From assembly GCA_002269645.1 (NCBI GenBank), contig NIVC01002925.1, positions 62,001 through 126,000 on the forward strand: a stretch of DNA of 64,000 nt, in the 5' to 3' direction. A program made the position numbers and the translations under genes. Positions 5,797-47,869 of the stretch are shown in pieces. Under the pieces are notes generated by a model, which saw only the letters and a program-made list of their open reading frames with translations, had not been told where the DNA came from and did not search any database. Origin of the DNA: Macrostomum lignano (taxonomy: Eukaryota). Within the stretch, counting starts at the first letter, position 1. The number at the start of each line of letters is the position of its first letter.

Positions 5797-8700
5797 TTAG
5801 TCTATCTGCCGTGTTGAACTCTTCTCAATGCCGTTCGGCTCAGTAAAGATTGCCTGCACATCGTTATGCAGGAAACTGTAGATGTCCTGCAGGCTGATTC
5901 TGGCAACATGGTCTGGCTCCCAGCAGCGCTGCACCAGGCCCTGCAGACGTGGCGGCACCGAATCCAATGGCAGCAGGTACTTCTGCGGCTTCTTTTTCAC
6001 GTACTCGACCAGATGCAAGGGTCCATTGTCCCTGGAAGGGTTGACGTAGAATGCCTCCAGCACTGGAATATGGCTGAACATCTCCCATATGAGGGTGCCG
6101 AAGCTCCAGCTGTCTGTGGTTGGGTAGATCTTAGTCTGCAAGTCCGTGGGCGGCAGGATGTACATGGGGAACTTTCGGTTGTCCTTCGGCAAGGTGTAAT
6201 ACAGGTACTCGGCATCAGCTCGCTTCTGAAACATCCCGGACAGACCGAAGTCGCCAATCTTCAGCCTGGGCGGCCCGGGGCTCAGGTTCTCCATCAGCAC
6301 GTTGCGGGCAGCCAGGTCGCAGTGGAACACTCCGTAATCGGAAAGAAACCTCATGCCCTGCAGTCGACGGGGGTTCACATGCTCTGCGTCTCTTGTGCCG
6401 GCCTATGCTTGCTAATCCATCTGTATCCCTAATCTATCCATGCTAATCTCTAATCTATCCGTGTTAATCCCTAATCTATCCATGCTAATCCCTAATCTAT
6501 CCGTGTTAATCCCTAATCTATCCGTGTTAATCCCTAATCTATCCGTGTTAATCCCTAATCTATCCATGCTAATCTCTAATCTATCCGTGTTAATCCCTAA
6601 TCTATCCGTGTTAATCCCTAATCTATCCATGCTAATCTCTAATCTATCCGTGTTAATCCCTAATCTATCCGTGTTAATCCCTAATCTATCCGTGTTTATC
6701 CCTAATCTATCCGTGTTAATCACTAATCTATCCATGCTAATCCCTAATCTATCCATCCTAATCTCTAATCTATCCGTGCTAATCTCTAATCTATCCGTGC
6801 TAATGCTTAATCTATCCATGTTAATCCTAATCTATTCGTGCTAATCCCTAATCTATCCATGTTAATGCCTAATCTATCCATGTCAAATGCCTAATCTATC
6901 CATGTTAATGCCTAATCTATCCATGTTAATGCCTAATCTATCCATGTTAAATGCCTAATCTATCCATGTTAAATGCCTAATCTATCCATGTTAAATACCT
7001 AATCTATCCATGTTAAATGCCTAATCTATCCATGTTAATGCCTAATCTATCCATGTTAAATGCCTAATCTATCCATGTTAAATGCCTAATCTATCCATGT
7101 TAATGCCTAATCTATTCATGTTGATGCCTAATCTATCCATGTCAAATGCCTAATCTATCCATGTTAATGCCTAATCTATTCATGTTGATGCCTAATCTAT
7201 CCATGTCAAATGCCTAATCTATCCATGTTAAATGCCTTATCTATGTGCATTAGTTCCGAATCTATTTATTTTAATCGCTAATATATGTGTTAATCCCTCA
7301 TCTATCCACTATCTGTGCTCATAAATCCCTGCTAATGTCTAATTTATCATGCAGAGCTAATCAAATTATGAAAAGGTATCAGCTAATCCCTTAAAAGCCT
7401 TGGGATTCTACTTCTCCATATCCCTATGCGGCTATTCCCACTCCAAAATCGATCTACCAAGCGGCTCACACTGGCAATCTGCCGCAGAAAGTCGAGTGCC
7501 CGGCCGTTAGGACTGCACAGCTCGGAGCGGTGGCTGGCCAGGTATTTGTCCAGCGCCATCTCCATGTAAGGAGTGATGAGCTGCTGCTCACCTGGGGGCA
7601 GGTGTTGGATGGCGCTGCTGCTTGCTGGGAATACTCACTCACTCTGACATACATGCGCAACCTTGGGAATCACTCGGCCGTTTCTATTGGCAACACACAC
7701 ATGTAAGTCGCTATTGGCTGAGAGCAGTCACGTGACTACTATTCCGTCCAATAGCGACTTACATGCGTGTGTTGCCAATAGAAACGGCCGGGTGAATCCC
7801 TAGGTTGCGCCCAAGCATGTCACTCACCCACTCACTCACTCACTCACTCACTCACCCACACACTCACATACCAACTCACTCACTCACCCACACACCAACT
7901 CACTCACTCACTCACCAACTCACTCACTCAACCACACACCCACACACCAACTCACTCACTCACCCACTCACTCACCCACACACCAACTCACTCACTCACC
8001 CACACACTCACTCACCCACACACCAACTCACTCACTAACCCACACACCAACTCACTCACTAACCCACACACCAACTCACTCACTAACCCACACACCAACT
8101 CACTCACTAACCCACACACCAACTCACTCACTAACCCACACACCAACTCACTCACTCACCCACTCACCCACACACCAACTCACTCACTCACCCACGCACC
8201 AACTCACTCACTCACCCACTCACCAACTCACTCACCCACGCACCAACTCACTCACTCACCCACGCACCAACTCACTCACTCACCCACGCACCAACTCACT
8301 CACTCACCCACTCACCAACTCACTCACTCACCCACTCACTCACTCACCCACACACCAACTCACTCACTCACCCACTCACTCACTCACCCACTCACTCACC
8401 CTCCGAAACCTTCAGCAGCTCCAGTATATTCTCGTGCTTCGGCAGACTCGCCTGCGTGAGGACCTCCTTGACGAATTGGCTGTTGGAGGCGTCGCTGCGG
8501 AGTGTCTTGACGGCCACGCTGACCCTGCGGCCGTTGAGCTGCAGGGAGCCGCGCACTACGGAGCCAAAGCAGCCGGAGCCCAGCTTTTCGCCGGTGAGCA
8601 GCAGATCGGACGGATTGAACTGCAGGTGCTGCGGGATCTCGGACACGCCCAGGCACTGGCCGTCGGACTCGCTGGGCAGAGGCAGCGGACAGCCCACGGG

Positions 8701-11700
8701 AAGCACAGGGTGATGGAGGACTTCACGAATCTCTGAAGGCACAAGGTTTGCAATTTGGTTGTCTGTACATATACAGCTTGCTTACTGCCTACTGCTCAGC
8801 GTACCGTATGACTCACTGCCTACCCAACATGCTCACTGCCTACCCAACACGCTCACTGCCTACCCAACACGCTCACTGCCTACCCAGCACACTCACTGCC
8901 TACCCAACATGCTCACTGCCTACCCAACATGCTCACTGCCTACCCAACATGCTCACTGCCTACCCAACATGCTCACTGCCTACCCAACATGCTCACTGCC
9001 TACCCAACATGCTCACTGCCTACTACTCAGCGGAACGTATCTGACTCACTGCCTACCCAACATGCTCACTGCCTACCCAACATGCTCACTGCCTACCCAA
9101 CATGCTCACTGCCTACCCAACATGCTCACTGCCTACCCAACATGCTCACTGCCTACCCAACATGCTCACTGCCTACCCAACATGCTCACTGCCTATCCAA
9201 CATGCTCACTGCCTACCCAACATGCTCACTGCCTACCCAACACGCTCACTGCCTACCCAACATGCTCACTGCCTACCCAACATGCTCATTGCCTACCCAA
9301 CATGCTCACTGCCTACCCAACATGCTCACTGCCTACCCAACATGCTCACTGCCTACCCAACATGCTCACTGCCTACCCAACATGCTCACTGCCTACTACT
9401 CAGCGAAACGTATCTGACTCACTGCCTACCCAACATCCTCACTGCCTACTACTCAGCGAAACGTATCTGACTCACTGCCTACCCAACATGCTCACTGCCT
9501 ACCCAACACGCTCAACTAGCGCTCACTTGTCTTATCCAGAGCATTGGTCTCCGCAACCAGCTCGAGCAGACAGGCCTCCTCGTTGCCCTGCGGAGCAGCC
9601 TTTGCCTTGACCAGCCGCATCACTGGCAGCAGTAGGTTGCATTCGCCGCAGGCGCTCGCCTCTCCATGACTATCATTGCACAGCAGTTCATCGTACAAGC
9701 AGTGGTGCAGCTTGTTCAAGTCGTTGGCAACAGACTCCTGCGTCGAAGCCGGACAAGCAAGGTCGCACAGCCGGACATTAATGGCGTTAGAGTCCAGGTA
9801 GTCGATCAAGATGTTCGACAGCTTGATGTTGTTGTGGTGCCTACTGTCCGACTGCAGAGTTCAATGCGTTCATGTGCACCACAATGAACACCAATACACT
9901 CCTGTACACCCCAATGAGCACCAATGCACTCCTGTACACCCCAATGAGCACCAATGCACTCCTGTACACCCCAATGAGCACCAATGCACTCCTGTACACC
10001 CCAATGAGCACCAATGCACTCCTGTACACCCCAATGAGCACAAATGCACTCCTGTACACCCCAATGAGCACCAATGCACTCCTGTACACCACAATGAGCA
10101 CCAATGCACTCCTGTACACCCCAATGAGCACCAATGCACTCCTGTACACCCCAATGAGCACCAATGCACTCCTGTACACCCCAATGAGCACAAATGCACT
10201 CTGTACACCCCAATGAACACAAATGCACTTTGTACACCCCAATGAACACAAATGCACTCCTGTACACCCCAATGAAGGAGTCCTATAAGCGCCACTTACA
10301 CAGGTCTGCCTGAGCAGGTACAGGAGTGCGCTGAGACACTGCCTGAGCATGCTGACCAGGTGAGCAACAGTGAAGTGAACTTTGCGCTGCCTGCTGGCGA
10401 GCAGAGTGGCACAGGAGGCGAGTCGCAGCTCTGAGATGATGCCAAACTCAGGCTCCAGGGTGAGCGCCAGCACCGGGTTGATGTGAGCGCAGTTCAGGCG
10501 GCAGGACTGGCTGGCGAGGGACATCAGGCGCCGCGTCTTCGCGAAGTTATTGAACTCCGGGGAGGAAGGCGGGGAGTTCAAAGGCAAATATATCTTATGG
10601 AATTACAGCCCCGTTCTTTCGTGATCCTATCTCCCCTGCTCATGATCCATTCCCCTGCTCATGATCCCATCTCCCCTGCTCATGATCCCATCTCCCCTGC
10701 TCATGATCCCGTCTCCCCTGCTCATGATCCCATCTCCCCTGCTCATGATCCCATCTCCCCTGCTCATGATCCCATCTCCCCTGCTCATGATCCCATCTCC
10801 TCTGCTCACGATCCCATCTCCCCTGCTCATGATCCCATCTCCCCTGCTCATGATCCCATCTCCCCTGCTCATGATCCCATCTCCCCTGCTCATGATCCCA
10901 TCTCCCCTGCTCATGATCCCATCTCCCCTGCTCATGACCCCATCTCCCCTGCTCATGATCCCATCTCCCCTGCTCATGATCCCATCTCCCCTGCTCATGA
11001 TCCCATCTCCCCTGCTCATGATCCCATCTCCCCTGTTCATGATCCCATCTCCCCTGCTCATGATCCCATCTCCTCTGCTCATGATCCCATCTCCCCTGCT
11101 CATGATCCCATCTCCCCTGCTCATGATCCCATCTCCCCTGCTCATGATCCATTTCCCCTGTTCATGATCCCATCTCCCCTGCTCATGATCCCATCTCCCC
11201 TGCTCATGATCCCATCTCCCCTGCTCATGATCCCATCTCCCCTGCTCATGATCCCATCTCCCCTGCTCATGATCCCATCTCCCCTGCTCATGATCCCATC
11301 TCCCCTGCTCATGATCCCATCTCCCCTGCTCATGATCCCATCTCCCCTGCTCATGATCCCATCTCCCCTGCTCATGATCCCATCTCCCCTGCTCATGATC
11401 CCATCTCCCCTGCTCATGATCCCATCTCCCCTGCTCATGATCCCATCTCCCCTGCTCATGATCCCATCTCCCCTGCTCATGCTTCAATTACCCGCGCACA
11501 GATTACACACAGTACACAAATCACAAAGTTAAATTGATTTCCAAGCAACTTTCGCAGCTTACCGACGGAATTCGCTTGAGCACAAGCCGGCTAGGAAGGT
11601 GAAACTTGTTGATCGTGAGGCTGATCCTCACAACTGTTTAGAGTGCATTTTGGCAATTTTCGTTTAAATTGGAGAAGTTAAGAAATGTAAAAAAAGGAAG

Positions 11701-14700
11701 ACAAAAATAAAGAAGTGGGTCGCTGACCTTGTCGATTCTCGTGATGGTTGTCAGTGAGCACCTGGAACTCGTTGGGCTTCAGCACCGGCAGGGTGTCCGG
11801 CCGGACCGCAAAGCCGTCCATGGGCAGCACGTCGGACAGCAGGCCCTGCAGCAGACGGCCGCAGCTGGCCCTGGCCGCCAGGGTTGGGTCCGCCATCCAG
11901 CCCACCTGGTGGGCTTTGTTGCCGTCAGACGGGTCCGACAGTGTCAGGCGGGGCTGCTCAGGATCTGAGCAGTTGAATGCTGTGAGCTGCAGGTTGAACT
12001 CGCACTGCTGCTCTGGGTCGGGGCCTCTGCCTGGGATGAACGGAGCTCTGCGAGAGGGTTGGGGATTGTCATGGGTGACCCACCCTTATCAGGGCTAATT
12101 AGCACCTGCACTCACTCACACTGGCCTGGGTGACCCACCCTTATCAGGACTAATTAGCACCTACACTCACTCACACTGGCTAAAAATGATACACCCTTAT
12201 CAGGGCTAATTAGCACCTGCACTCACTCACACTGGCTGAAGGTGATACACCCTTATCAGGGCTAATTAGCACCCACACTCACTCACACTGGCCTGAGTGA
12301 CACACCCTTATCAGGGATAATTAGCACCTGCACTCACTCACACTGGCTGAAGGTGATACACCCTTATCAGGGCTAATTAGCACCCACACTCACTCACACT
12401 GGCCTGAGTAACACACCCTTATCAGGGATAATTAGCACCTGCACTCACTCACACTGGCCTGAGTGACACACCCTTATCAGGGATAATTAGCACCTGCACT
12501 CACTCACACTGGCTGAAGGTGATACACCCTTATCAGGGCTAATTAGCACCTGCACTCACTCACAATGGCATGGGTGACCCACCCTTATCAGGGCTAATTA
12601 GCACCTGCACAGCACGGGTGACATCTAAACCACTCACATTCCTAGCACAGGCCTGTAGAGCTGCAGCAGTTTGGGCAGCAGCAGCCGGCTCTCCAGGGCC
12701 CCGTCAGGCTCCAGCATGGACTGGCTGAAGCTAACAGCCAGCAGCCGGTGCCGCTGCAAGTACCAGGCCATGGCCAGGGCCTCCCACTCGGAGCTGAACG
12801 CCATCACGTTCTGTCGGGTTCGGGCAGGCGAAAACTTTGTCAAATAATTCCGCATAGAAACCCGAAACTGGTTATTTACGCATGAAGTTGCAACGGTAGC
12901 TCACATAGTCCTTGTCCGCATTACTCGTGAACTCGCAGAAAACTGCTCGAGAATCGTTCGCCAGCAGCCGCAGACAATGGAGCTCCGCCTGCTTCGGCCG
13001 CCGCTGCTGTTGCTGCCTCGGCTCAGCGTCCAGGGACGGGATAGTGGGGAAAACCCTGCGGGAAGACAGGAACAATGTTGCATAACATTACTAACTAATG
13101 GGCTGCAGCTGACTAACTAATGGACTTCAGCTGACTAACTATTGGGCTGCAGCTGACTAACTAATGGGTTGCAGCTGACTAACTAATGCACTACAGCTGA
13201 CTAACTAATGGGCTACAGCTGACTAACTAATGGGCTACAGCTGACTAACTAATAAACTACAGCTACAGCTACAGCTGAACTACAGCTGAACTACAGCTGA
13301 CTAACTAATGAACTACAGCTACAGCTACAGCTGAACTACAGCTGAACTACAGCTGACTAACTAATGAACTACAGCTACAGCTACAGCTGAACTACAGCTG
13401 AACTACAGCTGACTAACTAATATATACAGCTAACTAATGGGCTACAGCTGACTAACTAATGAACTACAGCTGACTAACTAATGGGCTGCAGCTGACTAAC
13501 TAATGAACTACAGCTGACTAATGGGCTACAGCTGACTAATGGGCTACAGCTGACTAACTAATGAACTACAGCTGACTAATGGGCTACAGCTGACTAACTA
13601 ATGAACTACAGCTGACTAATGGGCTACAGCTGACTAACTAATGAACTACAGCTGACTAATGGGCTACAGCTGACTAACTAATGAACTACAGCTGACTAAT
13701 GGGCTACAGCTGACTAACTAATGCACTACAGCTGACTAATGGGCTGCAGCTGCACGCACCCAATGGCTGTGTGCGGCGGCTCCCAGGAGAGCCGGGCCAG
13801 CCGGGCAAAGCCGTCCTGACACATGAGCTGCTTCCAGTGCACAGTCTGCGACAGGCAGCTGTTCAAGCAGCCGCTGAACTCATCCAAAGGCAGGCGGCAC
13901 AGCGCTTTGTCCAGCTTCAGGCGGAGCGGCTCGTTCGCTAGCACAATTTCTAGGAAAGTCTGGAGGAAGCTGGCGCCAACGCATCTACGCGAAGTCGAGT
14001 CGCCGCTGCCTTCGGAGCGGTGCGACGCAGTCAGCTGCAACAGCTGACGCTGGCGCTCCTGGTACCACGGCTTGAACTCGCTCCAGCGGCGCTTGCTGAC
14101 GGCGCGATAGTCAACGGAGACGTCGGGCGAAAGGCGCCGCTTGCGGCCAGCCAGGTAGCGCCGGTGCAACAGCGTGTGGAGGCGCTTCACCCCGGCTGGG
14201 ATGTCGCCGCTGCTGCGCGTGGAGGCCGCCAGGCTCAGGCAGCTAGCGGCGCCGTCGGCAGCCGGCGTGAGGCCGGCCAGCCTGGGGATGGCAGTTTGTG
14301 GGATAAGCATTGGCTTTCTCTGAGTGGGGGATTGGGATTCTTTAGCTAAGACAGGGATAAATATTCTGAGGATGGGAATTGGGATCAATATTTTGAGGAT
14401 GGGGATTGGGATAAATATCCTGAGGATGGGGATTGGGATAAATAGTCTGAGCATGGGGATTGGGATCAATATCCTGAGGATGGGGATTTGGATAAATATC
14501 CTGAGGATGGGGATTTGGATAAATATCATGAGGATGGGGATTTGGATCAATATCATGAGGATGGGGATTGGGATAAATATCCTGAGGATGGGGATTGGGA
14601 TAAATATTCTGAGGATGGGAATTGGGATCAATATCCTGAGGATGGGGATTGGGATAAATAGTCTGAGCATGGGGATTGGGATCAATATCCTGAGGATGGG

Positions 14701-17700
14701 GATTGGGATAAATAGTCTGAGCATGGGGATTGGGATCAATATCCTGAGGATGGGGATTTGGATAAATATCCTGAGGATGGGGATTGGGATAAATATCCTG
14801 AGGATGGGGATTTGGATAAATATCCTGAGGATGGGGATTTGGATAAATATCCTGAGGATGGGGATTTGGATAAATATCCTGAGGATGGGGATTTGGATAA
14901 ATATCCTGAGGATGGGGATTTGGATAAATATCCTGAGGATGGGGATTTGGATAAATATCCTGAGGATGGGGATTTGGATAAATATCCTGAGGATGGGGAT
15001 TTGGATAAATATCCTGAGGATGGGGATTTGGATAAATATCCTGAGGATGGGGATTTGGATAAATATCCTGAGGATGGGGATTTGGATAAATATCCTGAGG
15101 ATGGGGATTTGGATAAATATCCTGAGGATGGGGATTTGGATAAATATCCTGAGGATGGGGATTTGGATAAATATCCTGAGGATGGGGATTTGGATAAATA
15201 TCCTGAGGATGGGGATTTGGATAAATATCCTGAGGATGGGGATTTGGATAAATATCCTGAGGATGGGGATTTGGATAAATATCCTAAGGATGGGGATTTG
15301 GATAAATATCCTGAGGATGGGGATTTGGATAAATATCCTGAGGATGGGGATTTGGATAAATATCCTGAGGATGGGGATTTGGATAAATATTCTGAGGATG
15401 GGGATTTGGATAAATATTCTGCGGATGGGGATTTGGATACATACGAGTATCATGAGGATGGGGATATTTATAAATATCCTGAGGATGGGGATTGGGATAA
15501 ATATTGTAAGGGTCATCATTAAGATTAACATCGCTGAAGGCCGCAGGGTCTCGCCTAAGGTTGGCACTCACTCATGCTCATCCAGCAGCAGCAGGCCGTA
15601 GATGAAGAACCAGAACGGCCTGGACGGGTAAGTCTCGTCAAAGTCGAAGCCGTACTTCTCATCGAGAAGCATCACCATAACCTGCTGGGCTACGTACATC
15701 AATAGCGATGGGTTCTTGCTCAGCACCTGCTGAATGAGAGACTTCCACCGATTGGGGAAGTCGCAGAACTTGCCGAGGTGGGCGCTGAAGCAGAGCCACC
15801 AATCGCAAGGCGACGGTTTGTCGCTGACTGAGTGGCGAGGTCGCTTCGGCAGCAGATCGAAAAACACCGAATAGAGGGGGTCAATGCCCACCTCGCTGAG
15901 AGCGCGACCAATGTTTGCATCGTGGCGTTGCGACTCAGGAATTTCGAATTGCTTGCCGCTGGACCGGTCGCCGAAATTGCTGACCGAAAAATACGAAGCG
16001 TAGCTGAATACCTTCTGAAAATTTAAGATTTACAAAGCATTTTTTCGATACATATCGGAAAACTGATTCGGCTGCTGTAAGTAGTTTTGCGTTAAAATAC
16101 TAGGCTATTTTTCTATTAGTTATTACTAATAGATAGATCAAGCCCAATATATGCTAGTTCTAGTTAGTAGAAGCATTAGATTCTAGAAAAAAACAATTTA
16201 ATGGGACTAATGTTGCATATGGCAATACCAGAGCCTTAAATAAAAAAGCCTAATTCTCAAATACTCCAAAAAATCTAAATATAATAGATCTCTAATATTT
16301 GTTTGTATGCTTGTTTATGCTAAAATTTAAATCTATAAATTTATTAACGAATCCAAAAAAATACTTTTTGGAAAAAAACGTTTGACTTTATATTTTAAAA
16401 AGTTGCATCGGCCGGGAATCGAACCCGGGCCGCCCGCGTGGCAGGCGAGCATTCTACCACTGAACCACCGATGCTTGACATTGTATCGAATTTTTTTGCA
16501 ATTTATAGCAAAACCTCAGCGCAAAGGGAGTAATTGAAACTTGAAGGAAGAGCAGAGCGCCTTTGCATCCTACCTTACAAAAAAGGGTCTGTCAACTTAA
16601 GCTCATAAAGTGGAGCTCGAGTGACCTATGTACACAAATGATGCATCATTCAATTCTGCCCACAGTGACACTAGGAACCTGGCTGCTGGGTTTGGCAAAA
16701 TGACAAATATTGAACTTGGCTTGGGAGGCTACTAGTCACTTTGGCAACAAGACACTTGGGCGATAGACACTTCTATCAATGATTAGTGACTATTATATCA
16801 ACTTAATCTCATAAAATATAGCAACCAATGCGCTAAAGTTAGATATGCTAATAAATTTGAAATTATTGATTGTAATTGCCAGAGTATTAATCAGAGTTAT
16901 TCAAAGTATAAAGTTGTCTCTCTTGAGGCATTGTACATTAAATAGATAAAGCCCACCACAAATATTCAACTTGGTGGTAAAAGGGCTAATGTCTATCTAA
17001 GGGTGTTCTGACCCCATGCACTTGCCTCTTATTTAGGGCTATCTAACTCTGCTACCCTTACTTGCATCATTTTGGCTTACTAGACTTTAAATAGTACTTT
17101 TATGCTACTTACTTAAATATGCCACAAGATAATATTGTTTTTCATTTACAAAAGGATCTTTCTCTTTATAACAATCAAAAATGGAAGCAAAAATATGTTT
17201 AGTGCACATTTTGCTTTAAAATTTTGACCTAAAAGCTTAAAAATTTGTATTTTTCTGATCCCAGGATTGGCTAAATATTGGGATTAAATCCTGGGATCCC
17301 AGGATCACAAAAAACCAGGATTTTGCAATCTCTAACCTTACCTCAACTAAACTATATTTATAGGCAATCTTCAAGTTTTGTTCGTTAAATTATTTTTTCA
17401 ATGATTCCTGAACTATCTTGCTCTGAGATGATTATTTTTGAGCTCTCCAGTGTACCCAGCCCTTTCCTAGTTGAGAAAGTAGCAGCTTAGTAGCATTTAT
17501 AATACTAATAGGCCTATAGTTAAATATTCCTAACATGCAGTAAAACATAAAAACAATACTAAAATCAATGCGTTTGTGTAAGAATCAAAATTATAACATT
17601 GATTTATTTTTGGTTTTCTAATCTAACGCAATATATATAGTAGGTATCACTATCATGACACGTATCAGATTATCCTAATATAATATCCAGACATTAATGC

Positions 17701-18045
17701 AAATGGATCTAGATGTATTAAAACCTGAAAGTAAAAAGTATTACACTGTCATTAAGCGTATCAAAGCCTTGCTGTAAAAAGTCCAGCCGTTGAACTAATG
17801 TTCAAAACGACAACTTGAAACAAAATTTGTGTAACTATACTTGGAACCATGCTTGGGCGCAACCTAGGGATTCACCCGGCCGTTTCTATTGGCAACACAC
17901 ACATGTAAGTCGCTATTGGACGGAATAGTAGTCACGTGACTGCTCTCAGCCAATAGCGACTTACATGTGTGTGTTGCCAATAGAAACGGCCGGGTGATTC
18001 CCAAGGTTGCGCATGCATGCTTGGAACACTTACTGCTATAGTCAT
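5797..18045 (-). CDS. JAK: Janus kinase (JAK)-like non-receptor tyrosine kinase, 12 exons, about 1119 aa
   Basis: Exons in transcript order: 18045-18034 (MTIA, least certain), 16014-15572, 14281-13760, 13055-12905, 12810-12638, 12047-11728, 11633-11563, 10593-10300, 9851-9527, 8732-8400, 7624-7470, 6357-5797. All junctions are GT-AG and phase-compatible; total 3360 nt. FERM-like motifs GIDPLYSVFFDL, FPNRW, SLLMYVAQQ and FSSEWEAL. Pseudokinase motifs LVLKR, LSALLYL, HHNNIKLSNILI and VRLCDL. Kinase motifs LGSGCFGSV, VAVKTL, QIASGMRFL, HCDLAARN, KIGDFGLS, EYLYY, DSWSFG and RCW. Confidence 0.8.
6418..7240. repeat. About 21-bp minisatellite (ctaatctatccgtgttaatcc) in the last JAK intron
   Basis: Direct tandem units; source of spurious ORFs 6412-6819 and 6440-6844. 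Confidence 0.95.
7648..7819. mobile_element. 172-bp hairpin MITE, copy 1 (hAT-like)
   Basis: Near-identical reverse complement of 17848-18019; about 63-bp inverted arms around a spacer with the palindrome agtcacgtgact. The TSD is not cleanly preserved here. Confidence 0.85.
7820..8399. repeat. (ACTC)n-based compound micro/minisatellite; reads GTGAGT-rich on the JAK sense strand
   Basis: cactcactcacccacacaccaact-type units run up to the exon donor at 8399. Confidence 0.95.
8800..9510. repeat. 20-bp minisatellite (catgctcactgcctacccaa)
   Basis: Direct tandem units filling JAK intron 8733-9526. Confidence 0.95.
9880..10273. repeat. 30-bp minisatellite (ctcctgtacaccccaatgagcaccaatgca)
   Basis: Direct tandem units filling JAK intron 9852-10299. 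Confidence 0.95.
10635..11480. repeat. 21-bp minisatellite (catgatcccatctcccctgct)
   Basis: Highly homogeneous tandem units in JAK intron 10594-11562. Confidence 0.95.
12070..12610. repeat. About 56-bp minisatellite (cacccttatcagggctaattagcacctgcactcactcacactggc...)
   Basis: About ten tandem units in JAK intron 12048-12637. Confidence 0.95.
13090..13752. repeat. Compound ctgactaactaatgggctacag / gctaca minisatellite
   Basis: Tandem units of about 18-22 bp filling JAK intron 13056-13759. Confidence 0.9.
14350..15505. repeat. 27-bp minisatellite (ggataaatatcctgaggatggggattt)
   Basis: Tandem units with a homogeneous core in JAK intron 14282-15571; explains the 9-aa periodic ORFs. Confidence 0.95.
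16404..16474 (-). tRNA. trnG-GCC: tRNA-Gly (GCC)
   Basis: Reverse complement GCATCGGTGGTTCAGTGGTAGAATGCTCGCCTGCCACGCGGGCGGCCCGGGTTCGATTCCCGGCCGATGCA: cloverleaf, A and B boxes, GCC anticodon, downstream T tract. Confidence 0.97.
17848..18019. mobile_element. 172-bp hairpin MITE, copy 2 (hAT-like, 8-bp TSD)
   Basis: CATGC...GCATG ends, exact 8-bp TSD cttggaac (17840-17847 and 18020-18027), about 63-bp arms with 2 mismatches. Confidence 0.9.
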
Positions 18046-18422
18046 ATCGCACGGGCCACGTGCGAGGAAGGTGAAAACGAAAAACGAAAATAGTTCAAGC
18101 TTACATTTCTAGTAAATTCAAAATAAAGTTATTGAAAGTGAAATTGTTTTTTTAATTAAGTAGTAAAAACAAGATTATACTTTCTTATAAATAGGTAAAA
18201 ACACTTTTGTATTTGTTTTAGTATGTTTTTGTTTCTAACCCGGCCGTTCATATTATTTAAATGACCGCAAAGGCTCTTGAACTTGCACCAGCCACGAGCA
18301 AAGTAAAAGCGTCTTCTGGTAACACATTTAAAGCCTTATCTTGTTCTTTTCGTGCCTCGTAGCACTTCGTGCCGGGGTTAAAATTACTTTACTTTTTCTT
18401 TGTCTGCAATTGCAAAAGCAAG
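18046..18422. promoter_or_regulatory. Putative bidirectional promoter between JAK-like and CDV3
   Basis: The divergent ATGs at 18045 (minus, inferred exon 1) and 18423 (plus) are 377 bp apart. Based on gene geometry only. Confidence 0.45.
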
Positions 18423-21400
18423 ATGGGTGATCTCGATGACTTTTTTGCAAAGAAGGACAAGAAAAAGGGGAAAACTAAGATTGTTGCTGCCAATCTCCTG
18501 GATGAAATGAAAAAAGAGAATGAGGCTAAAAAGGAAAAACAGAAGAAGAAACAACTGCTTGAAAGTAATGAACAGGCACCGCATGTTCTAAAGAAGACTA
18601 AGGTATGTGACTATTGAGATAAGATTTATTTGAGAGTAGACTAATTAACAAGGCCTCGATAAATAATTTGTCCTTTAGCTTGGTTAATGTTTCATTTTTT
18701 ATTCATTACTCGCTGTTATTAAACTTATAATGCAATTTATATATAGATATTGACAAATAAGATATTGTTTATCTAAGCCTAAAAACTGCCATTATAATCT
18801 ATTATAATTTGTAGGCCTATATAATTATAAGTATTTTATCTAATGAATGGCAATTAGGAAATACAAAATCTTGGGATTCCTGGGATTGGGATATCTTGGA
18901 CTTTGCTAATCCTAGGATCCCAACAAATTGGGCTAGGATCCCAAGATTCAAGCATTTAAAAAGTTTCTAATCTTTGTTAATGCAATTTGGCTTTATGTAG
19001 CCATCTAACCTGATTTTAAAGGGCTTTCAATAATAAAGAATAGAACAAAATATTTTACAAACAAGAAACTAACAATGAGCCCTGAATTGGAATATAATAT
19101 ATAAGCTGATATATTAAATATGCTTATTTATATGCTAGTATTAGCTTAGGAAAATCACACTTAATTGTGATATAACCTAGGGAATGATAGCTTATAGAGC
19201 TATAGCCAAGGCCAGAGGTACTAATATCAAGATAGAAGGGGAATCTAGGCAGGGGATTAGACCTTACTTTCTTAAAGGCCCTACCCTAGATAAAGAACTA
19301 GTAGCTTAGGTTGTAGTTTAATAGCAAAGTGCCAATGTTCTAATCCCTACTATGGCCAAGGAATTTTAAAGGTAGACTGCTTAGGCAATAGTACAGTTTC
19401 GTTCACAAAATTATTTTTCATTTAAATTTGAAAGTTCAAAACCAGAAAACAAAAACAACAATGTTTTAAACCATTCTAGCGACTATGCCAAAGCTCACTG
19501 GTCATGGAACTTTAAAGCAAATGGGCACTCTATTAATATACTTTTTTGATTAAATCTGTTCCACGTTCGAATGCTACTTGAAATGCAAGTTGTCTATGGA
19601 AAAAATATTTTAAAAAAACGCCATGACTAGGGACACGGAGAACATGATTTGATACATGTACGTAGGTAGCTCGAATGTCACCAGTAGTGTTCGTAAAGAC
19701 AGTTAAATATTGTGTCGATCAATCTTTTCCAATATACTAAAACTCATAAGTATATAACTGTGTCGTGGATCCAAGTTTGTCTTTTGGTCAAATAGGCTGT
19801 TTTTTCACTTCTCCGATTTTCACCCAAATCTAACAACCGCCGTGCCCCCAGGCATGTGAGTGGTAGATTACTAGGAACACGGCTGCTGTGTCCCCATATA
19901 CAGAGCTAGGGACACGGTGGCCGTGCCGCGAGTCCACACAGCTAAAGACACAGCTGCCATGGCTCTAGGCACAGAGTAGTGTGGTAGCTATGGACACGGC
20001 GGCCGTGTCCTTAGACATAGAGTTAGAGGCTCGAAAAATCAAAAGGGGCTCAAGTGGGGGGGGCTTGAACTGTTTCCCTTTACCTGAGAAGCTGCTAATA
20101 TCTGCTTTTTCTTTTGGACAACATATTGTATCATGGCTAGACGACCACCAAGACCCTCGTGGATAATTCCGCTGAATGAAGTGCTGCTAGCAAATGCTCT
20201 ACCGCAACTAGAGCTAAATGCGTGCGACCTGATGGCTGCCACGGTCTCTGCCACAATCATTAGAATGGTTTAAAACATTATTTTTTATTGTTGTTATTGT
20301 TTTCTGGTTTCAAACTTTCAAATTTAAACAAAAAATAATTTTGCAAACGAAACTGCACTATTGCCACTGCTTAAAGTACATATAGTTTGCTACCAACCCT
20401 ATGTTAGGCATCTAAAAGGTGTCTTGATAGTGCTAAGAATAAAGTCTTTTGTATTAAAAGAGGGCTTTTGATCTGCGCAAAGTTGAGACCCCCTGATTTT
20501 AACCTAGGTTTGAGATAAAAAGGTAGTTCAAATGAAAAAATGATTTGACTCCTATCCTGGGTTTTTTAGGCCATACGGGGTTTTTGGCCCCTTGAAAATC
20601 TTATTGGCAACTGGATTTTTGGCATCAGAGGCCAATCAAATGATGCCACTTCATTTTTCCTATGCCAGTTGCCAATTTAAAAAAAAGTTGTAAATATAAT
20701 ATTTATATATTCATATAAGATTTTGTAAATATAATAAAATGCCATATAAATTGATATGATAGAATTGTTAGTTGATATGATAAAAAAAAGCAGGACAACT
20801 GGGTTATGATTTTCACCTGACAGTAGCTCAGTTGCAGATATTACTACTTAGAATAAATGGTTGAATTATTTTAGATTAACCTGTTTTCAGATTTAGTAAC
20901 TTTGTAGTATTGAGTACCATTGACACATAATATCCTAAATATTATTTATCTTAGTGCCCTGATGCTTTAAATTTGTCATCAGTGTCTATTTTTAATATCT
21001 TATACTTTTACCTTTTATATTCAATATAAATTTTCTATGTATTAAATCTTTTTGATTTACCAAAATCCCATCTTTTTCGGTCTAGCCATAGAAACTAAAA
21101 TTCTCATTATAGTCCAGTTCTCATTAGGCTACTGTTAGTAGACTGTGCCCACTGTCTCCCCATCCAACCCAGGAGGATGACGACTGGGAGGACTTCGACG
21201 ACCCATCAGGCCTCAACCTCGAAGGCCTCCGCGTGGTGAACCTGGCCGAGCGCCAAGCCCAGGAGGCCAGCAGCGAGGGCGGCTCTGGCCAGGATGGCGG
21301 CGAGGCCGGCTCCGTTGACGAAGGTCCCTGGCGTCGCAAAGCTGCTGAATCAGCCGCTGCGGCCGCCGCTGCCGCTGCACCCGCAGAATCTGCTGCTGCG

Positions 21401-21901
21401 GCTGGCGGCGAGGCCGGCGGCGGCGAAGCTCCGGCAGCGTCAGCTGCTGCTGGCGGCGGCGCCAGCGCTGATTCGCAGGCGGCCTCGGCTGGCGGCGGCA
21501 GCGGCGAGGCTCCGTCGGCGCCGCGGGCCACCCAGTACGTGCCGCCGCACCGGCGCACGGCAGCAGCGGCCGTCAGCGGGCGCCCGGCTGCCGACCTGTT
21601 CGCTGCCAGGCCGCTGCCGCGCGGCTCCGGCCGACGCGACAAGAACGCGCCGAACATCAACGACGTGGAGGAGTTCCCCACACTGGCGCCGGGCGTCAGC
21701 GGCGGAGCTGAGAGCAGCGAAACGTCGGCGACTGCCGGCCGGCCGGGTGTGGAGGACAGCCGGCCATTTGAGAGCGTGCGAGACCCGGGCGGCCGCCGGA
21801 GCCACCCGGCGCACTCGCAGGCGTTCGGCGGCTCGGCCAAGCCCGAGGCCGTCCAGGTGAGCAACCGGTGGAACGCGCTGAGCGAAGACGGGGCCAGCTG
21901 A
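18423..21901 (+). CDS. CDV3: CDV3 homolog, 2 exons, 302 aa
   Basis: Exon 1 18423-18602 (MGDLDDFFAKKDKKK, donor AAG|gtatgt); exon 2 21173-21901 (cag|EDDDWEDFDDPSGLNLEGLRVVNL, YVPPHRR, APNINDVEEFPTL, VSNRWNAL). These match CDV3 family motifs and the join is phase 0. Confidence 0.92.
19384..20365. mobile_element. 982-bp non-autonomous TIR element with 8-bp TSD (Merlin- or Mutator-like) in the CDV3 intron
   Basis: Ends GGCAATAG...CTATTGCC, imperfect inverted repeats of about 95-105 bp, exact TSD actgctta (19376-19383 and 20366-20373), internal ggacacgg/gtgtcc motifs. No ORF recognised. Confidence 0.8.
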
Positions 21902-23306
21902 CGCGGCCTTTCCGGACCAGCCTGCTTGGCGCCGTTTGTTTGGCCTCGACTGACGCCTCGTCTCGTGAATGGCCCCATCACGCCTGAGCTGCTCCTCTGT
22001 CCCCCTCTCTCTCTCTTAACATTATTTCTCGTCAATCTCTTCGTCAGCATCCGTAGTTCATTAAAAAACATTTCTTAAGAATGAATCGCGCCCAGAGCAT
22101 GCTAACTTCTAACTCACTCATTCGTGCCGAGTACCGCTCGTCAGCAGCCAGTTTGGTGATCTGGACTGATCCCGTGTGTCCTTCCTAATGCCCTAAAATC
22201 TCTCCCCCATTGCAGTGGGTGCGGCCGCTGTGCTTTGTGTCCTCGTGCTTAAAACATGAATCAGAGTGTTGGTGTAGCTTTCGTTGACTGTTTTCCGGAG
22301 TAATTGGCAATTTACTAAATAAAACGAGAAAAAAATCTTTAACAAGTTAATAGAGCCAAATATTTTTGCCTTGCTGTTGTTTCTTTTTCTAACATTTTTA
22401 TTACTGTAAGTAGCGCTTGCGGCGTTCTGATTTCGCTTTCAATCTGACCTCGGTTTTACTGATAAATCAGCTAAAAAAATCCATCTTAGCAAATTGCTCA
22501 GTCCTTGGCTTCTCACTTATTGCTTTTGAAGCCGGCGGGCCTGTTCCGCTTGTTACCCTGTCTGTCCCTCATTTCTGTACAGGATTCAATTTGGCAATCG
22601 CAGCCCCATCTCCAGTTTGTCTGCAGCATCTGGTTCAAGTTTATTGCATGCGATTTAGGTTACATTTGATTCGGCTTTGAACCTAGGTTAGTGCTAGTGC
22701 AGGGGGACTTTATTGGAATTTATGTATGCCTTGTTGGTTGGGCAGAGTTGGGGGTTAAGCGGAGCTGGTCATGGTTAGTGCGCAGCTGAATAGGCTGTCT
22801 GCCCCTGTGACACTCCCCCCACTAAGGCACCCACCGTGAGCTGAGCTTGAGTCGATGTGACTCTGATGAGACATTTTGAGCGTATTAGTCTCACCAACAG
22901 ACTAAAAACTTGGTGCTCCTCCAGAATCACTTTTTGGCAATGAATGGAGTCAATATAAACGCCCTTATCAAGAGATATTGCTTAGTTGCTGTAAGAAGTT
23001 GCACCTCAGCGAAATGCGACGGAAAGCCTTGGTTGGTTCCTTCAGTCCCATCCAATCAGAAACCGTTTAACGATAGTTTCTTTCTGCCAAGTTGCATGTC
23101 TTATGCATGCTACATAAGCTGGATCTTTCATTCTATATTACTCTTGCGTTATCCTGCGATTACTAAAGGTCGTTTTTAAAGGGCCGGAATTGTTGCGAGC
23201 CTCTGTTTAGCTACTGGTAAGACAGCCGCCTTTTCTACATATGTACGTGTAATTGATCATTGTCGCTTATTAGAAGTGCCTTCAAATTGTAGGGAAATTT
23301 CTGGAA

Positions 23307-25232
23307 AACTGGGTGTTTGTAGCGTCCACCGGAAGCTGGGTGTTTGTAGCGTCCACCGGAAGCTGGGTGTTTGTAGCGTCCACCGGAAGCTGGGTGTTTG
23401 TAGCGTCCACCGGAAGCTGGGTGTTTGTAGCGTCCACCGGAAGCTGGGTGTTTGTAGCGTCCACCGGAAGCTGGGTGTTTGTAGCGTCCACCGGAAGCTG
23501 GGTGTTTGTAGCGTCCACCGGAAGCTGGGTGTTTGTAGCGTCCACAGGAAGCTGGGTGTTTGTGGCGTCCACAGGAAGCTGGGTGTTTGTGGCGTCCACA
23601 GGAAGCTGGGTGTTTGTGGCGTCCACAGGAAGCTGGGTGTTTGTGGCGTCCACAGGAAGCTGGGTGTTTGTGGCGTCCACCGGAAGCTGGGTGTTTGTAG
23701 CGTCCACCGAAAACTGGGTGTTTGTGGCGTCCACAGGAAGCTGGGTGTTTGTAGCGTCCACAGGAAGCTGGGTGTTTGTGGCGTCCACCGGAAGCTGGGT
23801 GTTTGTGGCGTCCACCGGAAGCTGGGTGTTTGTGGCGTCCACAGGAAGCTGGGTGTTTGTGGCGTCCAAAGGAAGCTGGGTGTTTGTAGCGTCCACCGGA
23901 AGCTGGGTGTTTGTGGCGTCCACAGGAAGCTGGGTGTTTGTGGCGTCCACCGAAAGCTGGGTGTTTGTGGCGTCCACCGGAAGCTGGGTGTTTGTGGCGT
24001 CCACCGGAAGCTGGGTGTTTGTGGCGTCCACCGGAAGCTGGGTGTTTGTGGCGTCCACCGGAAGCTGGGTGTTTGTGGCGTCCACCGGAAGCTGGGTGTT
24101 TGTAGCGTCCACCGAAAACTGGGTGTTTGTGGCGTCCACAGGAAGCTGGGTGTTTGTAGCGTCCACAGGAAGCTGGGTGTTTGTGGCGTCCACCGGAAGC
24201 TGGGTGTTTGTAGCGTCCACCGAAAACTGGGTGTTTGTAGCGTCCACAGGAAGCTGGGTGTTTGTAGCGTCCACAGGAAGCTGGGTGTTTGTGGCGTCCA
24301 CCGGAAGCTGGGTGTTTGTGGCGTCCACAGGAAGCTGGGTGTTTGTGGCGTCCACAGGAAGCTGGGTGTTTGTAGCGTCCACCGGAAGCTGGGTGTTTGT
24401 AGCGTCCACAGGAAGCTGGGTGTTTGTAGCGTCCACCGGAAGCTGGGTGTTTGTGGCGCCCACAGGAAGCTGGGTGTTTGTAGCATCCACCGAAAACTAG
24501 GTGTTTGTGGCGTCTACCGAAAACTGGTTGTTTGTGGCGCCCACCGAAAACTGGGTGTTTGTGGCGCCCACCGAAAACTGGTTGTTTGTGGCGCCCACCG
24601 AAAACTGGTTGTTTGTGGCACTCACCGAAAGCTGGGTGTTTGTGGCGCCCACCGAAAATTGGTTGTTTGTGGCGCCCACCGAAAACTGGGTTTTGTGGCG
24701 CCCACCGAAAACTGGGTGTTTGTGGCACCCACCGAAAACTGGTTGTTTGTGGCGCCCACCGAAAACTGGGTTTTGTGGCGCCCACCGAAAACTGGGTGTT
24801 TGTGGCACCCACCGAAAACTGGTTGTTTGTGGCGCCCACCGAAAATTGGGTGTTTGTGGCGCCCACCGAAAACTGTTTGTTTGTGGCGCCCACCGAAAAC
24901 TGGTTGTTTGTGGCGCCCACCGAAAACTGGTTGTTTGTGGCGCCCACCGAAAGCTGGGTGTTTGTGGCGCCCACCGAAAACTGGTTGTTTGTGGCGCCCA
25001 CCGAAAATTGGGTGTTTGTGGCGCCCACCGAAAACTGGTTGTTTGTGGCGCCCACCGAAAACTGGTTGTTTGTGGCGCCCACCGAAAACTGGTTGCTTGT
25101 GGCGCCCACCGAAAGCTGGGTGTTTGTGGCGCCCACCGAAAACTGGGTGTTTGGTGCCCACCGAAAGCTGGGTGTTTGTGGCGCCCACCGAAAACTGGTT
25201 GTTTGTGGCGCCCACCGAAAACTGGGTGTTTG
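23307..25232. repeat. 27-bp minisatellite (gctgggtgtttgtagcgtccaccggaa grading to aactggttgtttgtggcgcccaccgaa)
   Basis: About 70 head-to-tail units with no spacers; source of the many 9-aa periodic ORFs. Confidence 0.97.
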
Positions 25233-26934
25233 TGGCGGAACTGCGGGTGATTTTCGTCAGCGCCTGTTGGTACATGCACAACTACAGATTTGCAGCATGT
25301 GGCAACCAAGGACCACTAGCAGTATATCAGATATCAGTAGTTGTCCTTGGTGGCAACTGGGTGCCTGCAACACCTGAGTAGCTTAAAAGTACATGTATGG
25401 GTGCATATGAGCTGTCACGCCTGGCTTCGTGACTCACGGAGCATACAACAGTGACACCTGCAACGACCTGCAAGATTAAAGATCCTCGGAGCGGATCTGC
25501 CGAGCTGCACGCTCTTACAGCTGGTTGAGCAGGCAAAAACAATGTGGGCTGAAAGAAGCTGCAAATGAATGCTTCTTTCCTGCTGAGCAGCCCACGCGAA
25601 AAAGCTTTTCGGTGAGACGGCTGGCAGTAGGATTTTTAGGGATTAATTTGATACGCGTCTTGCGTGCGTGTCAGCAGGGTGACGGGGCGATGAGTCTGTT
25701 GCTGATCAGCTAATCAGGGCCTGGCTGAGGAGTTTGGCCACTTCCGTCTGGCCTTCCCATCAGCCGCGGGTCGCACCGCACTTTGCCACGCAGACTCACT
25801 TTGCCACGCAGACTGCGGCCAGATCTTGCAGGCTTTTGTGCCCCCGCGCGCAGGACAGGAAGATGCGGCTGTAGCGGGATGAGGCTGTAAGGAAGAGAGG
25901 GGATGCTGAGAACTGGGTGAAGGGGGAATTGTGTGAGAGAGATCCCGCGGACCTGAATCTGCGGCATGTCAAGCAGGGCGACTTACAAGGGCCGCGTGCC
26001 CGGGCTCCTGCAAGACTCTGCTTCCACTCTACAACCCTGCGCGGCCCGCGTCTGTGTCACGTCACGGCATTCCAAATGAAAAAAGAGGCTGTGAGAGGCT
26101 GGGGGTCGCGCGGCAGGCCTATGAGGAGGAGATGGAGAGGCGATGCAGAGAGGAGAGGGGAATTCGCTGCCGAGGAGCTGGCGCGTGCGATAGCGCATGA
26201 AGTGCTGAAAGTGGGTGAGGAGAGGCCGGGGCCGGGACTCCACTGTGTCTACACCTCCTAAGCCTCGCCTCCTCCGGCCCTCATCGTCTTGGCGCTTAAG
26301 CTGCCAAACTCTGTGGGCTCTTCTTCTTCTTCTTCTTCTTCTTCTTCTCGCTTTTTGTCGCCTTTCGGCATAGCTCACCGGGAGTCCCTTACTCCAGCTC
26401 TTACGCTTCGCATTGCCGATCTTGTCTCTCTCGCCTGCTCACTCCGGTGATTCACGATGGTTTTGTTTAAAGAGGTCCCACGGTTCGTTATGCCGTGGTC
26501 ACTCTGCCGGGTGCGGTTTTGCCCGCGGGACGTGGTTTTCAAATCACGGCCGCGGGCCTCACCGCCCCCCCGGTTCCTTATTTGCCAGACTGGCACGCCA
26601 GTCTGCCCGCTTGGCACCAATCGTGGAGGTTGGGAACCATCGCCAAGCACTCTGTGGGCTCTCGATTAAATTGCCCGGCTTCGTCATCATCTTTTATGGT
26701 TTGCAACTTGTTTAGAAATCGTTTTTCCTCCACAGTGGCGGTTTGAATTTGTCCAGGTCGAGTTTGTACACGTATGATGCCGTGGTGATTCGCACAATGC
26801 TGCGGTTTGCCATGCGAATTGAGCCAATTCAGGGGTATCTTCAACGCGGCATCGGAGAAAGGATGCTACTAAATTTATAAGACATGCAGATTGAATTCTA
26901 TAGGAACTGCTTTACTAGCAACAAAGCTAACTGT

Positions 26935-28587: not shown

Positions 28588-28658
28588 TGCATCGGCCGGG
28601 AATAGAACCCGGGCTGCCCGCGTGGCAGGCGAGCATTCTACCACTGAACCACCGATGC
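28588..28658 (-). tRNA. trnG-GCC: tRNA-Gly (GCC) variant with a T-loop substitution; possibly a pseudogene
   Basis: Same as the other copies except GGTTCTATT instead of GGTTCGATT in the B box/T-loop, and CAGC instead of CGGC in the variable loop. Confidence 0.85.
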
Positions 28659-29845: not shown

Positions 29846-29916
29846 TGCATCGGCCGGGAATCGAACCCGGGCCGCCCGCGTGGCAGGCGAGCATTCTACC
29901 ACTGAACCACCGATGC
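29846..29916 (-). tRNA. trnG-GCC: tRNA-Gly (GCC)
   Basis: Identical 71-nt sequence to 16404-16474, with a downstream T tract. Confidence 0.97.
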
Positions 29917-47400: not shown

Positions 47401-47869
47401 CCAGTTCCCCATAACCTGGCGAATCCCGTCAGCTGTGCAAAAGCACGCGACAAAACAAAGATAAGCAAAGCTGCCTCAGTGCCACTCGCAAATTCCCTAT
47501 ATGAATTTTTAATATCCCGTAAGTGCCAGCCAGGGGCGGCAGCGCTAGCGCAATCCAGACTCCCAGAGGATCTTTGATAAAAAATGAAATCCCCCAACCC
47601 TGCCCGGCTGTCCAAAGTGGTGAAGCTGTGGCACACGCAGCAGACGGCAGAGATGAAGAATCTGCCCTTTGCCTGCCGCGGGCAGCACTGCAGGAATGCC
47701 GACGGCACACGAAATGAGGAAATTTGCTGAAGGTAATGAAAATCACAAGCACCGCCTGTTTGTCAAAAAATGAACCGAAAAATACTTCGTATTGGTTCGT
47801 GTTGATGAAGATAGCTTGTGCTGCAACAGTCACACTGCCGTACTTGCACCTCGAACTACCCTCCATCAA

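What the first reader, a model, noticed from the sequence alone, without database searches (positions are those of the whole stretch)
5797..18045. Full-length, highly divergent Janus kinase gene hidden among minisatellite introns
Seen: 12 phase-compatible exons give about 1119 aa with two kinase-fold domains in tandem, the first catalytically degenerate (HHNNIKLSN in place of HRD, CDL in place of DFG). Known: FERM-SH2-pseudokinase-kinase at about 1100-1150 aa is diagnostic of JAKs, and GIDPLYSVFFDL and FSSEWEAL resemble the JAK FERM motifs GITPVYHNMFAL and LSSLREAL. Inference: a true JAK ortholog with a barely recognisable SH2 region. JAK distribution is patchy in some invertebrate lineages, so if the host is a flatworm this bears on where JAK-STAT signalling was kept. 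The ORF track shows only fragments of it.
Basis: partly seen in the sequence, partly recalled or inferred. Interest (0 to 1): 0.75.

Follow-up and report, generated by a model that had tools for sequence, protein, structure and literature searches.

The report
Flatworm tandem-kinase gene, JAK identity unproven
This is a real, already annotated gene of the flatworm Macrostomum lignano; its protein has a degenerate kinase-like domain followed by a tyrosine kinase, as Janus kinases do, but no test I could run shows it to be a Janus kinase.

Summary
The window is Macrostomum lignano contig NIVC01002925.1. The finding is gene BOX15_Mlig009938g2 (PAA54357.1, "hypothetical protein, partial"). On the minus strand, 11 GT-AG exons (16014..5797) reproduce that protein exactly. 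Eight of the ten introns are filled with minisatellites.

The C-terminus is a clear tyrosine kinase (Pfam E 2e-44). A degenerate kinase-like domain (HHNNIKLSN, CDL) lies upstream, but its support is weak (Pfam E 7e-4; hhalign E 2e-4).

All three genomic copies are annotated from the 16014 acceptor. The M. lignano spliced leader ends in ATG and would supply an in-frame start codon there.

The JAK reading is not confirmed. The 525-residue N-terminus matched no FERM or SH2 in Pfam, PDB sequences, 1.84 billion proteins or hhalign against JAK1/JAK2/JAK3/TYK2. The quoted motif matches are at chance level. The kinase domain is no closer to JAKs than to Eph, SYK or MET. Both AlphaFold models failed (pLDDT 34).

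The architecture is JAK-like, but membership is unproven (about 0.3).

The parts
16015..16016 (-). AG of the acceptor TTTTCAG|AAG. Proposed spliced-leader trans-splice site. The leader's terminal ATG would be in frame: ATG|AAG GTA TTC = M-K-V-F.
   Evidence: The annotated models of all three copies begin at or within 3 nt of this site. The spliced-leader sequence ends in ATG (PMC8629364). There is no in-frame genomic ATG upstream before a stop. The trans-splicing itself is inferred, not shown.
15572..16014 (-). Exon 1 (443 nt). N-terminal orphan region; contains GIDPLYSVFFDL and FCDFPN.
13760..14281 (-). Exon 2 (522 nt). Orphan region.
12905..13055 (-). Exon 3 (151 nt). Orphan region.
12638..12810 (-). 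Exon 4 (173 nt, annotated acceptor GACAG|AAC, 94-nt intron); contains FSSEWEAL. An alternative in-frame acceptor at 12867 (37-nt intron) would add 19 residues.
   Evidence: The homologue P0009 lacks the 19 residues.
11728..12047 (-). Exon 5 (320 nt). End of the orphan region and start of the kinase-like domain.
11563..11633 (-). Exon 6 (71 nt micro-exon, VVRISLTINKFHLPSRLVLKRIPS). Putative beta2-beta3 of the kinase-like domain.
10300..10554 (-). Exon 7 (255 nt). alphaC to alphaE of the kinase-like domain. The annotated g2 isoform uses an alternative acceptor at 10536, which drops FNNFAK.
9527..9851 (-). Exon 8 (325 nt). Degenerate catalytic loop HHNNIKLSN, CDL in place of DFG, and a short C-lobe.
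8400..8732 (-). Exon 9 (333 nt). Linker and N-lobe of the tyrosine kinase (GSGCFGS, VAVK).
7470..7591 (-). Exon 10 (122 nt). Hinge to alphaE of the tyrosine kinase.
5797..6357 (-). Exon 11 (561 nt including the stop at 5797-5799). Tyrosine kinase C-lobe (HCDLAARN, DFG, YLYY).

Best explanation
The locus is the expressed 11-exon gene Mlig009938.g2 of Macrostomum lignano.

Start codon. The mRNA most likely starts by spliced-leader trans-splicing at 16014, with the leader supplying the AUG.

Protein. It is about 1085-1092 residues, with no signal peptide or membrane segment visible by eye, and has three parts:
- A 525-residue N-terminal region with no detectable relative outside Macrostomum-like sequences.
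- A roughly 230-residue degenerate kinase-like domain. It has no glycine loop, an Asn in place of the catalytic Asp, CDL in place of DFG, and a short C-lobe.
- A tyrosine kinase domain at the extreme C-terminus. It keeps the glycine loop, VAVK, an alphaC Glu candidate (by eye), HCDLAARN and DFG, so it is probably active.

Proposed mechanism (inferred, not shown). The protein is a non-receptor tyrosine kinase. The adjacent pseudokinase regulates its catalytic domain, and the N-terminal region docks it to a partner. In other words it works like a JAK.

Origin. Whether it descends from JAK is unresolved. On the evidence here it is best filed as an unclassified, fast-evolving, lineage-restricted tandem pseudokinase-tyrosine kinase, not as a demonstrated JAK.
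For: - Exon model: it equals PAA54357.1 exactly, and the window equals NIVC01002925.1.
- Three intact genomic copies: all splice sites are kept, there are no indels, and dN/dS is 0.2-0.3 overall and 0.12-0.15 in the kinase-like domain.
- Tyrosine kinase domain: Pfam E 2e-44. Best PDB matches are Eph, MET and EGFR at about 1e-23.
- Kinase-like domain: Pkinase E 7e-4. CDK13 aligns alphaE, the catalytic loop, the DFG position and alphaF. hhalign against a 20-member tyrosine-kinase profile gave E 2e-4 over 103 columns.
- Spliced leader: its sequence ends in ATG, and annotated gene boundaries are set at trans-splice sites.
- Lineage restriction: the only relatives found are M. lignano copies and one 43%-identical transcript fragment.
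Against: - The kinase-like domain rests on sub-threshold scores.
- No structure could be predicted for the N-terminus or the kinase-like domain (pLDDT 34).
- Trans-splicing at 16014 is inferred from annotation boundaries, not from reads I could see.
- The tyrosine kinase has unusual HCD (not HRD) and PPT (not APE) motifs, so its activity is not certain.
- The overall architecture is otherwise known only from JAKs, which argues for JAK descent rather than an independent origin.
Confidence: 0.6

Rival explanations
1. It is a true orthologue of JAK/Hopscotch. Its FERM, SH2 and JH2 domains have diverged beyond sequence recognition, and it keeps the JAK mechanism: receptor docking through FERM-SH2, with JH2 regulating JH1.
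For: - A roughly 525-residue N-terminus, then a pseudokinase, then a C-terminal tyrosine kinase, in about 1090 residues. This architecture is otherwise known only from JAKs (established knowledge; domains).
- The catalytic Asp is replaced by Asn in the upstream domain, as in the JAK JH2 motif HGN.
- The tyrosine kinase has tandem tyrosines in its activation loop. It also has 9 extra residues between alphaF and the CW motif (63, against 54 in most tyrosine kinases and 68-69 in JAK JH1), and part of the extra length aligns within the JAK-specific insertion.
- JAK exists in molluscs (PMC13203501).
- A STAT homologue is reported in the planarian Schmidtea mediterranea (PMC8797187), so a flatworm JAK would make sense.
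Against: - No FERM or SH2 signal in Pfam at E<=10, PDB phmmer or profile search, 1.84 billion proteins or hhalign against JAK1/JAK2/JAK3/TYK2 FERM-SH2 (probability 1%; global z 0.6).
- JH1 scores higher against EPHA3, SYK, MET and ZAP70 than against any JAK. It was never sister to JAK JH1 in 200 neighbour-joining bootstraps.
- The upstream domain has a Ser/Thr-type IKLSN loop. It fits generic tyrosine-kinase or CDK profiles better than JAK JH2.
- DDR1 also has an insertion at the same site.
Confidence: 0.3
2. The long gene model is an artefact. Either it fuses two genes (an orphan N-terminal gene plus a kinase gene), or it is a decaying pseudogene whose ORF was stitched together.
For: - The N-terminal half has no recognisable domains.
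- The GenBank models are flagged partial.
Against: - Eleven exons have compatible phases and canonical splice sites, and are conserved without indels in three copies.
- dN/dS is below 1.
- The annotations are transcript-based.
- An independent transcript fragment (P0009) runs from the N-terminal region into the first exons of the kinase-like domain.
- The UniProt models also join the N-terminus to the kinase.
Confidence: 0.03

Closest known systems
Janus kinases (JAK1/JAK2/JAK3/TYK2, Drosophila Hopscotch)
   Same: - A cytoplasmic protein of about 1100 residues.
- A long N-terminal region, then a catalytically degenerate kinase-like domain (catalytic Asp replaced by Asn, no DFG), then a tyrosine kinase that ends the protein.
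- Tandem tyrosines in the activation loop.
- Extra residues after alphaF, partly at the site of the JAK-specific insertion.
   Different: - No detectable FERM or SH2.
- The upstream domain is shorter, has a Ser/Thr-like IKLSN catalytic loop and shows no affinity to JH2 profiles.
- The tyrosine kinase is about 30% identical to JAK JH1, the same as to many other tyrosine kinases, and does not cluster with them.
- HCD replaces HRD, and PPT replaces APE.
Generic metazoan tyrosine kinases (Eph, MET, SYK/ZAP70, ACK/TNK1, VEGFR)
   Same: These are the best sequence matches of the C-terminal domain (29-35% identity). The HxDLAARN tyrosine-kinase signature is shared.
   Different: None of these families has an upstream pseudokinase or this N-terminal region. 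No family-level affinity was resolved.
FAK/PYK2 (FERM plus tyrosine kinase)
   Same: Non-receptor tyrosine kinases with a long N-terminal docking module.
   Different: FAK has no pseudokinase and carries a long C-terminal FAT region after the kinase. FAK is among the weaker matches of this kinase domain.

Membership tests
Protein tyrosine kinase (TK group) | Kinase domain matching PK_Tyr_Ser-Thr above threshold, with an HxDLAARN-type catalytic loop, the VAxK lysine and DFG. | tested here: met
   Pfam PF07714 E 2e-44, 152 bits against a cutoff of 23.1. HCDLAARN, VAVK and DFG are read directly.
JAK | N-terminal FERM domain (F1, F2, F3). | tested here: inconclusive
   No hit at E<=10 in Pfam, PDB sequences or 1.84 billion proteins. 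hhalign against JAK FERM-SH2 gave probability 1%. The AlphaFold2 model is unusable (pLDDT 33.8). There is no positive evidence, but the fold is not excluded.
JAK | SH2-like domain between FERM and JH2. | tested here: inconclusive
   The same searches as for FERM gave no SH2 signal in residues 400-525. No structure is available.
JAK | Pseudokinase (JH2) immediately upstream of the tyrosine kinase, related to other JH2 domains. | tested here: inconclusive
   A kinase-like domain is weakly supported (Pkinase E 7e-4; tyrosine-kinase profile E 2e-4). It has no affinity to a JAK JH2 profile (probability 2.8%). Its catalytic loop is Ser/Thr-like (IKLSN).
JAK | The C-terminal kinase (JH1) groups with JAK JH1 rather than with other tyrosine-kinase families. 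| tested here: not met
   phmmer scores: EPHA3 89.6, SYK 79.6, MET 79.0, ZAP70 76.3, JAK2 73.7 bits. In the neighbour-joining tree it is a long branch basal to all tyrosine kinases and was sister to JAK JH1 in 0 of 200 bootstraps. Its hhalign score is higher against the non-JAK tyrosine-kinase profile than against the JAK JH1 profile. Caveat: this is a crude distance tree with human sequences only. The comparison sequences were written from memory. I checked JAK1 JH1, JAK3 JH1 and JAK1 JH2 against PDB sequences; the other kinase domains, including the rest of the JAK set, EPHA3, SYK and MET, were not checked.
JAK | JAK-specific insertion after alphaF in JH1. | tested here: inconclusive
   There are 63 residues between DxWSFG and CW, against 54 in most tyrosine kinases, 68-69 in JAKs and 62 in DDR1. 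Only part of the extra length aligns with the JAK insertion.
JAK | Pathway partners in the same genome (STAT, box1/box2 cytokine receptor, SOCS). | not testable with these tools
   The M. lignano genome could not be searched here. The literature reports a STAT in a planarian and says JAK and STAT are not detected or not known in Platyhelminthes.

The most novel reading that the evidence does not exclude
This is the missing flatworm Janus kinase. It would be a JAK whose receptor-docking FERM-SH2 half has diverged beyond all sequence recognition, retained in an early-branching flatworm lineage. No flatworm JAK is reported in the papers I read, although a STAT is reported in a planarian.
Probability: 0.3. 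Interest if true: 0.65.

Novelty: new variant of a known kind. Interest (0 to 1): 0.4.

Why it matters
In the papers I could read, JAK is described as undetected or unknown in Platyhelminthes (PMC13203501), while a STAT homologue is reported in a planarian (PMC8797187). A flatworm protein with the JAK domain order is therefore the obvious candidate for the missing kinase.

If it is a JAK, it shows how far the FERM-SH2 module can drift, and it restores a JAK-STAT axis to a regeneration model that has transgenesis. If it is not, it is an independent pseudokinase-tyrosine kinase tandem, which would be an interesting case of convergence.

Either way, the gene is currently labelled only "hypothetical protein". 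Its start codon appears to come from the spliced leader, which explains why all database models are flagged "partial".

Tried and rejected
1. Structure route. AlphaFold2 on residues 1-525 (3-sequence alignment) and on the kinase-like domain both gave pLDDT of about 34. I did not run fold search on them, because matches to such models are meaningless.

2. Deepening the alignment. The word-indexed search and the exhaustive search of 1.84 billion representatives found only M. lignano copies and one 43%-identical Logan transcript fragment (P0009, SRR30276804). That is too few sequences for AlphaFold2 or for strong profiles.

3. Profile-profile comparison. hhalign against JAK FERM-SH2 (JAK2, JAK1 and TYK2 sequences checked against PDB; JAK3 from memory) found only an 18-column, out-of-order match, FCDFPN (E 0.055). 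Shuffle controls gave z 0.6 (global) and 2.1 (local). I rejected this as evidence.

4. Equal or better ungapped matches occur in 87% and 98% of shuffles. I rejected these as evidence.

5. Kinase classification by pairwise scores, a neighbour-joining bootstrap tree and family profiles gave no family placement. The sequence is a long branch.

6. The only candidates are a 4-27 residue ORF with a GTAAGT donor, lying beside or inside a copy-specific MITE. I rejected it in favour of the spliced-leader start.

7. The 37-nt intron between exons 3 and 4, which I first chose. I replaced it with the annotated 94-nt intron, because P0009 lacks the 19 extra residues and all three GenBank models use the 94-nt intron.

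8. A literature search for Mlig009938 found nothing.
Full report
**What is there.** Stop-to-stop ORFs on the minus strand between 16.0 and 5.8 kb form a chain of coding segments. I read each junction directly. Eleven exons (16014-15572, 14281-13760, 13055-12905, 12867 or 12810-12638, 12047-11728, 11633-11563, 10554 or 10536-10300, 9851-9527, 8732-8400, 7591-7470, 6357-5797) join through canonical GT-AG introns with compatible phases. They give one uninterrupted ORF. CDS GC3 is 0.79, while the flanking sequence at 16-20 kb is about 35% G+C. Eight of the ten introns are each filled by a different minisatellite with a period of 20-55 nt. The other two introns are 94 nt long.

**Identity of the locus.**
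- A protein search with the first 808 residues returned one cluster: "hypothetical protein BOX15_Mlig009938g1/g2/g3, partial" of Macrostomum lignano, together with UniProt "protein kinase domain-containing protein" entries.
- The window is 100% identical to NIVC01002925.1 of assembly GCA_002269645.1.
- With acceptors 12810 and 10536, my exons translate exactly to PAA54357.1.
It is annotated, though without a family name.
- The other two genomic copies keep all eleven exons, all splice sites and the frame, with no indels.
- dN/dS between copies is 0.2-0.3 overall and 0.12-0.15 in the kinase-like domain. The counts of differences are small.
- The lengths of the minisatellite introns differ between copies (for example 5586, 808 and 857 nt for one intron). 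The two 94-nt introns are constant.

**The 5' end.**
The only ORFs there are 4-27 codons long and end at a GTAAGT donor.
- The sequence just downstream of 18045 (17848-18019) is a 172-nt palindromic MITE-like element with a 98%-matching copy at 7648-7819. It is absent from the two paralogous loci.
- All three GenBank models begin at, or 3 nt from, the acceptor TTTTCAG|AAG at 16014. M. lignano gene boundaries were set from trans-splice sites (PMC5730564).
- The M. lignano spliced leader is CGGTCTCTTACTGCGAAGACTCAATTTATTGCATG (PMC8629364). Joined at 16014, its terminal ATG is in frame: M-K-V-F-S-Y.
- This explains the "partial" flag and removes the need for an upstream exon. It is an inference; I could not see the reads.

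**Domains.**
- The C-terminal 270 residues are a tyrosine kinase (PF07714, E 2e-44). It has GSGCFGS, VAVK, HCDLAARN, DFG and a YLYY activation loop. The HCD and PPT motifs (in place of HRD and APE) are unusual.
- Upstream, residues of about 526-753 give a sub-threshold Pkinase hit (E 7e-4).
- That region also gives a CDK13 alignment covering alphaE, HHNNIKLSN, CDL and alphaF (E 0.11).
- hhalign gave E 2e-4 over 103 columns against a profile of 20 tyrosine kinases.
- I accept the region as a degenerate kinase-like domain at about 80%.
- The first 525 residues match nothing.

**Is it a JAK?** I tested each defining feature that I could.
- FERM and SH2: no Pfam hit at E<=10, either on fragments or on the whole protein.
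- PDB sequences, which include JAK1, JAK2 and TYK2 FERM-SH2: no relevant hit with the single sequence or with a profile.
- Exhaustive HMMER search of 1.84 billion representatives with residues 1-753: only a self fragment and P0009, a 43%-identical transcript fragment.
- hhalign against an alignment of the JAK1, JAK2, TYK2 and JAK3 FERM-SH2 regions: probability 1%. The only match is an 18-column FCDFPN segment in the wrong order. Shuffle controls gave z 0.6 (global) and 2.1 (local). The JAK2, JAK1 and TYK2 sequences were checked against PDB entries 4Z32, 5IXD and 4PO6.
- Kinase domain: about 30% identical to JAK JH1, the same as to DDR1, CSK, EPHA3 and ACK1. It scores higher with EPHA3, SYK, MET and ZAP70 than with any JAK. 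The large-database hits were VEGFR-like, TNK1 and ACK1. In a neighbour-joining tree it is a long branch outside all human tyrosine kinases.
- Upstream domain: no affinity to a JAK JH2 profile (probability 2.8%). Its catalytic loop, IKLSN, is of the Ser/Thr type.
- AlphaFold2 failed on both the N-terminus and the kinase-like domain (pLDDT 33.8 and 34.0), because only three sequences were available. No fold comparison was possible.

**What speaks for JAK.**
- The architecture itself is otherwise known only from JAKs: a 525-residue N-terminus, a pseudokinase, and a tyrosine kinase that ends the protein.
- The catalytic Asp is replaced by Asn in the upstream domain.
- The activation loop has tandem tyrosines.
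- There are nine extra residues after alphaF, partly at the JAK insertion site.
- There is biological context. JAK occurs in molluscs, while it is reported as undetected or unknown in flatworms (PMC13203501). A STAT homologue exists in a planarian (PMC8797187).

**Verdict.** I file the gene as an unclassified, fast-evolving, lineage-restricted tandem pseudokinase-tyrosine kinase that probably works like a JAK. I put the probability that it is a true JAK descendant at about 0.3.

**Limits.**
- All protein-search quotas were used.
- Most comparison kinase sequences were written from memory. I checked the JAK2, JAK1 and TYK2 FERM-SH2 regions, JAK1 JH1, JAK3 JH1 and JAK1 JH2 against PDB sequences. 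The remaining kinase domains were not checked.
- The tree is a crude distance tree without invertebrate JAKs.

Noticed in passing
window 7648-7819 and 17848-18019: A 172-nt element that is itself palindromic (63-nt arms) occurs twice in inverted orientation at 98% identity, once in an intron of the kinase gene and once upstream of it. The upstream copy is missing from the two paralogous loci, so it is a recent MITE-like insertion.
   Followed up: partly
window 16404-16474, 28588-28658, 29846-29916 (all minus strand): Three tRNA-Gly(GCC) genes. One sits 390 nt upstream of the kinase gene's first acceptor, on the same strand, inside what would be the outron if the gene is trans-spliced.
   Followed up: no
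window 5797-16014; loci L003 and L004: Eight of the ten introns each carry a different minisatellite. These introns differ in length between the three genomic copies (for example 5586, 808 and 857 nt for one intron), while the two 94-nt introns are invariant. The exons differ by only 0-3%.
   Followed up: partly
window 12810/12867 and 10536/10554: Two pairs of in-frame alternative acceptors, 57 nt and 18 nt apart. The annotated g2 model uses 10536, while g1 and g3 use the equivalent of 10554.
   Followed up: partly
window 21176-21901 (+) and ORF from 18411 (+): A CDV3 homologue (Pfam PF15359, E 9e-11). A separate short ORF at 18411 begins MGDLDDFFAKKDKKKGK, which looks like a CDV3 N-terminus by eye but has no Pfam hit. 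It is divergently oriented to the kinase gene.
   Followed up: partly
window 51884-52297 (-): An exon encoding an EF-hand protein (EF-hand_7, E 2e-18). It looks calcineurin-B-like by eye.
   Followed up: partly
window 23171-25237, about 47737-49300, and 54069-54364/54804-55099: Two very large minisatellite arrays (27-nt and 20-nt periods), and a 296-nt inverted repeat pair at 99% identity separated by 439 nt, possibly the ends of a transposon.
   Followed up: no
L001 (Logan SRR30276804 contig, 1228 nt): This is the only non-M. lignano-annotated relative found. It is a transcript fragment 43% identical over residues of about 180-560 and lacks a 30-residue loop of exon 3. Its species is unknown, and it appears to run into the intron after the micro-exon equivalent.
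   Followed up: partly
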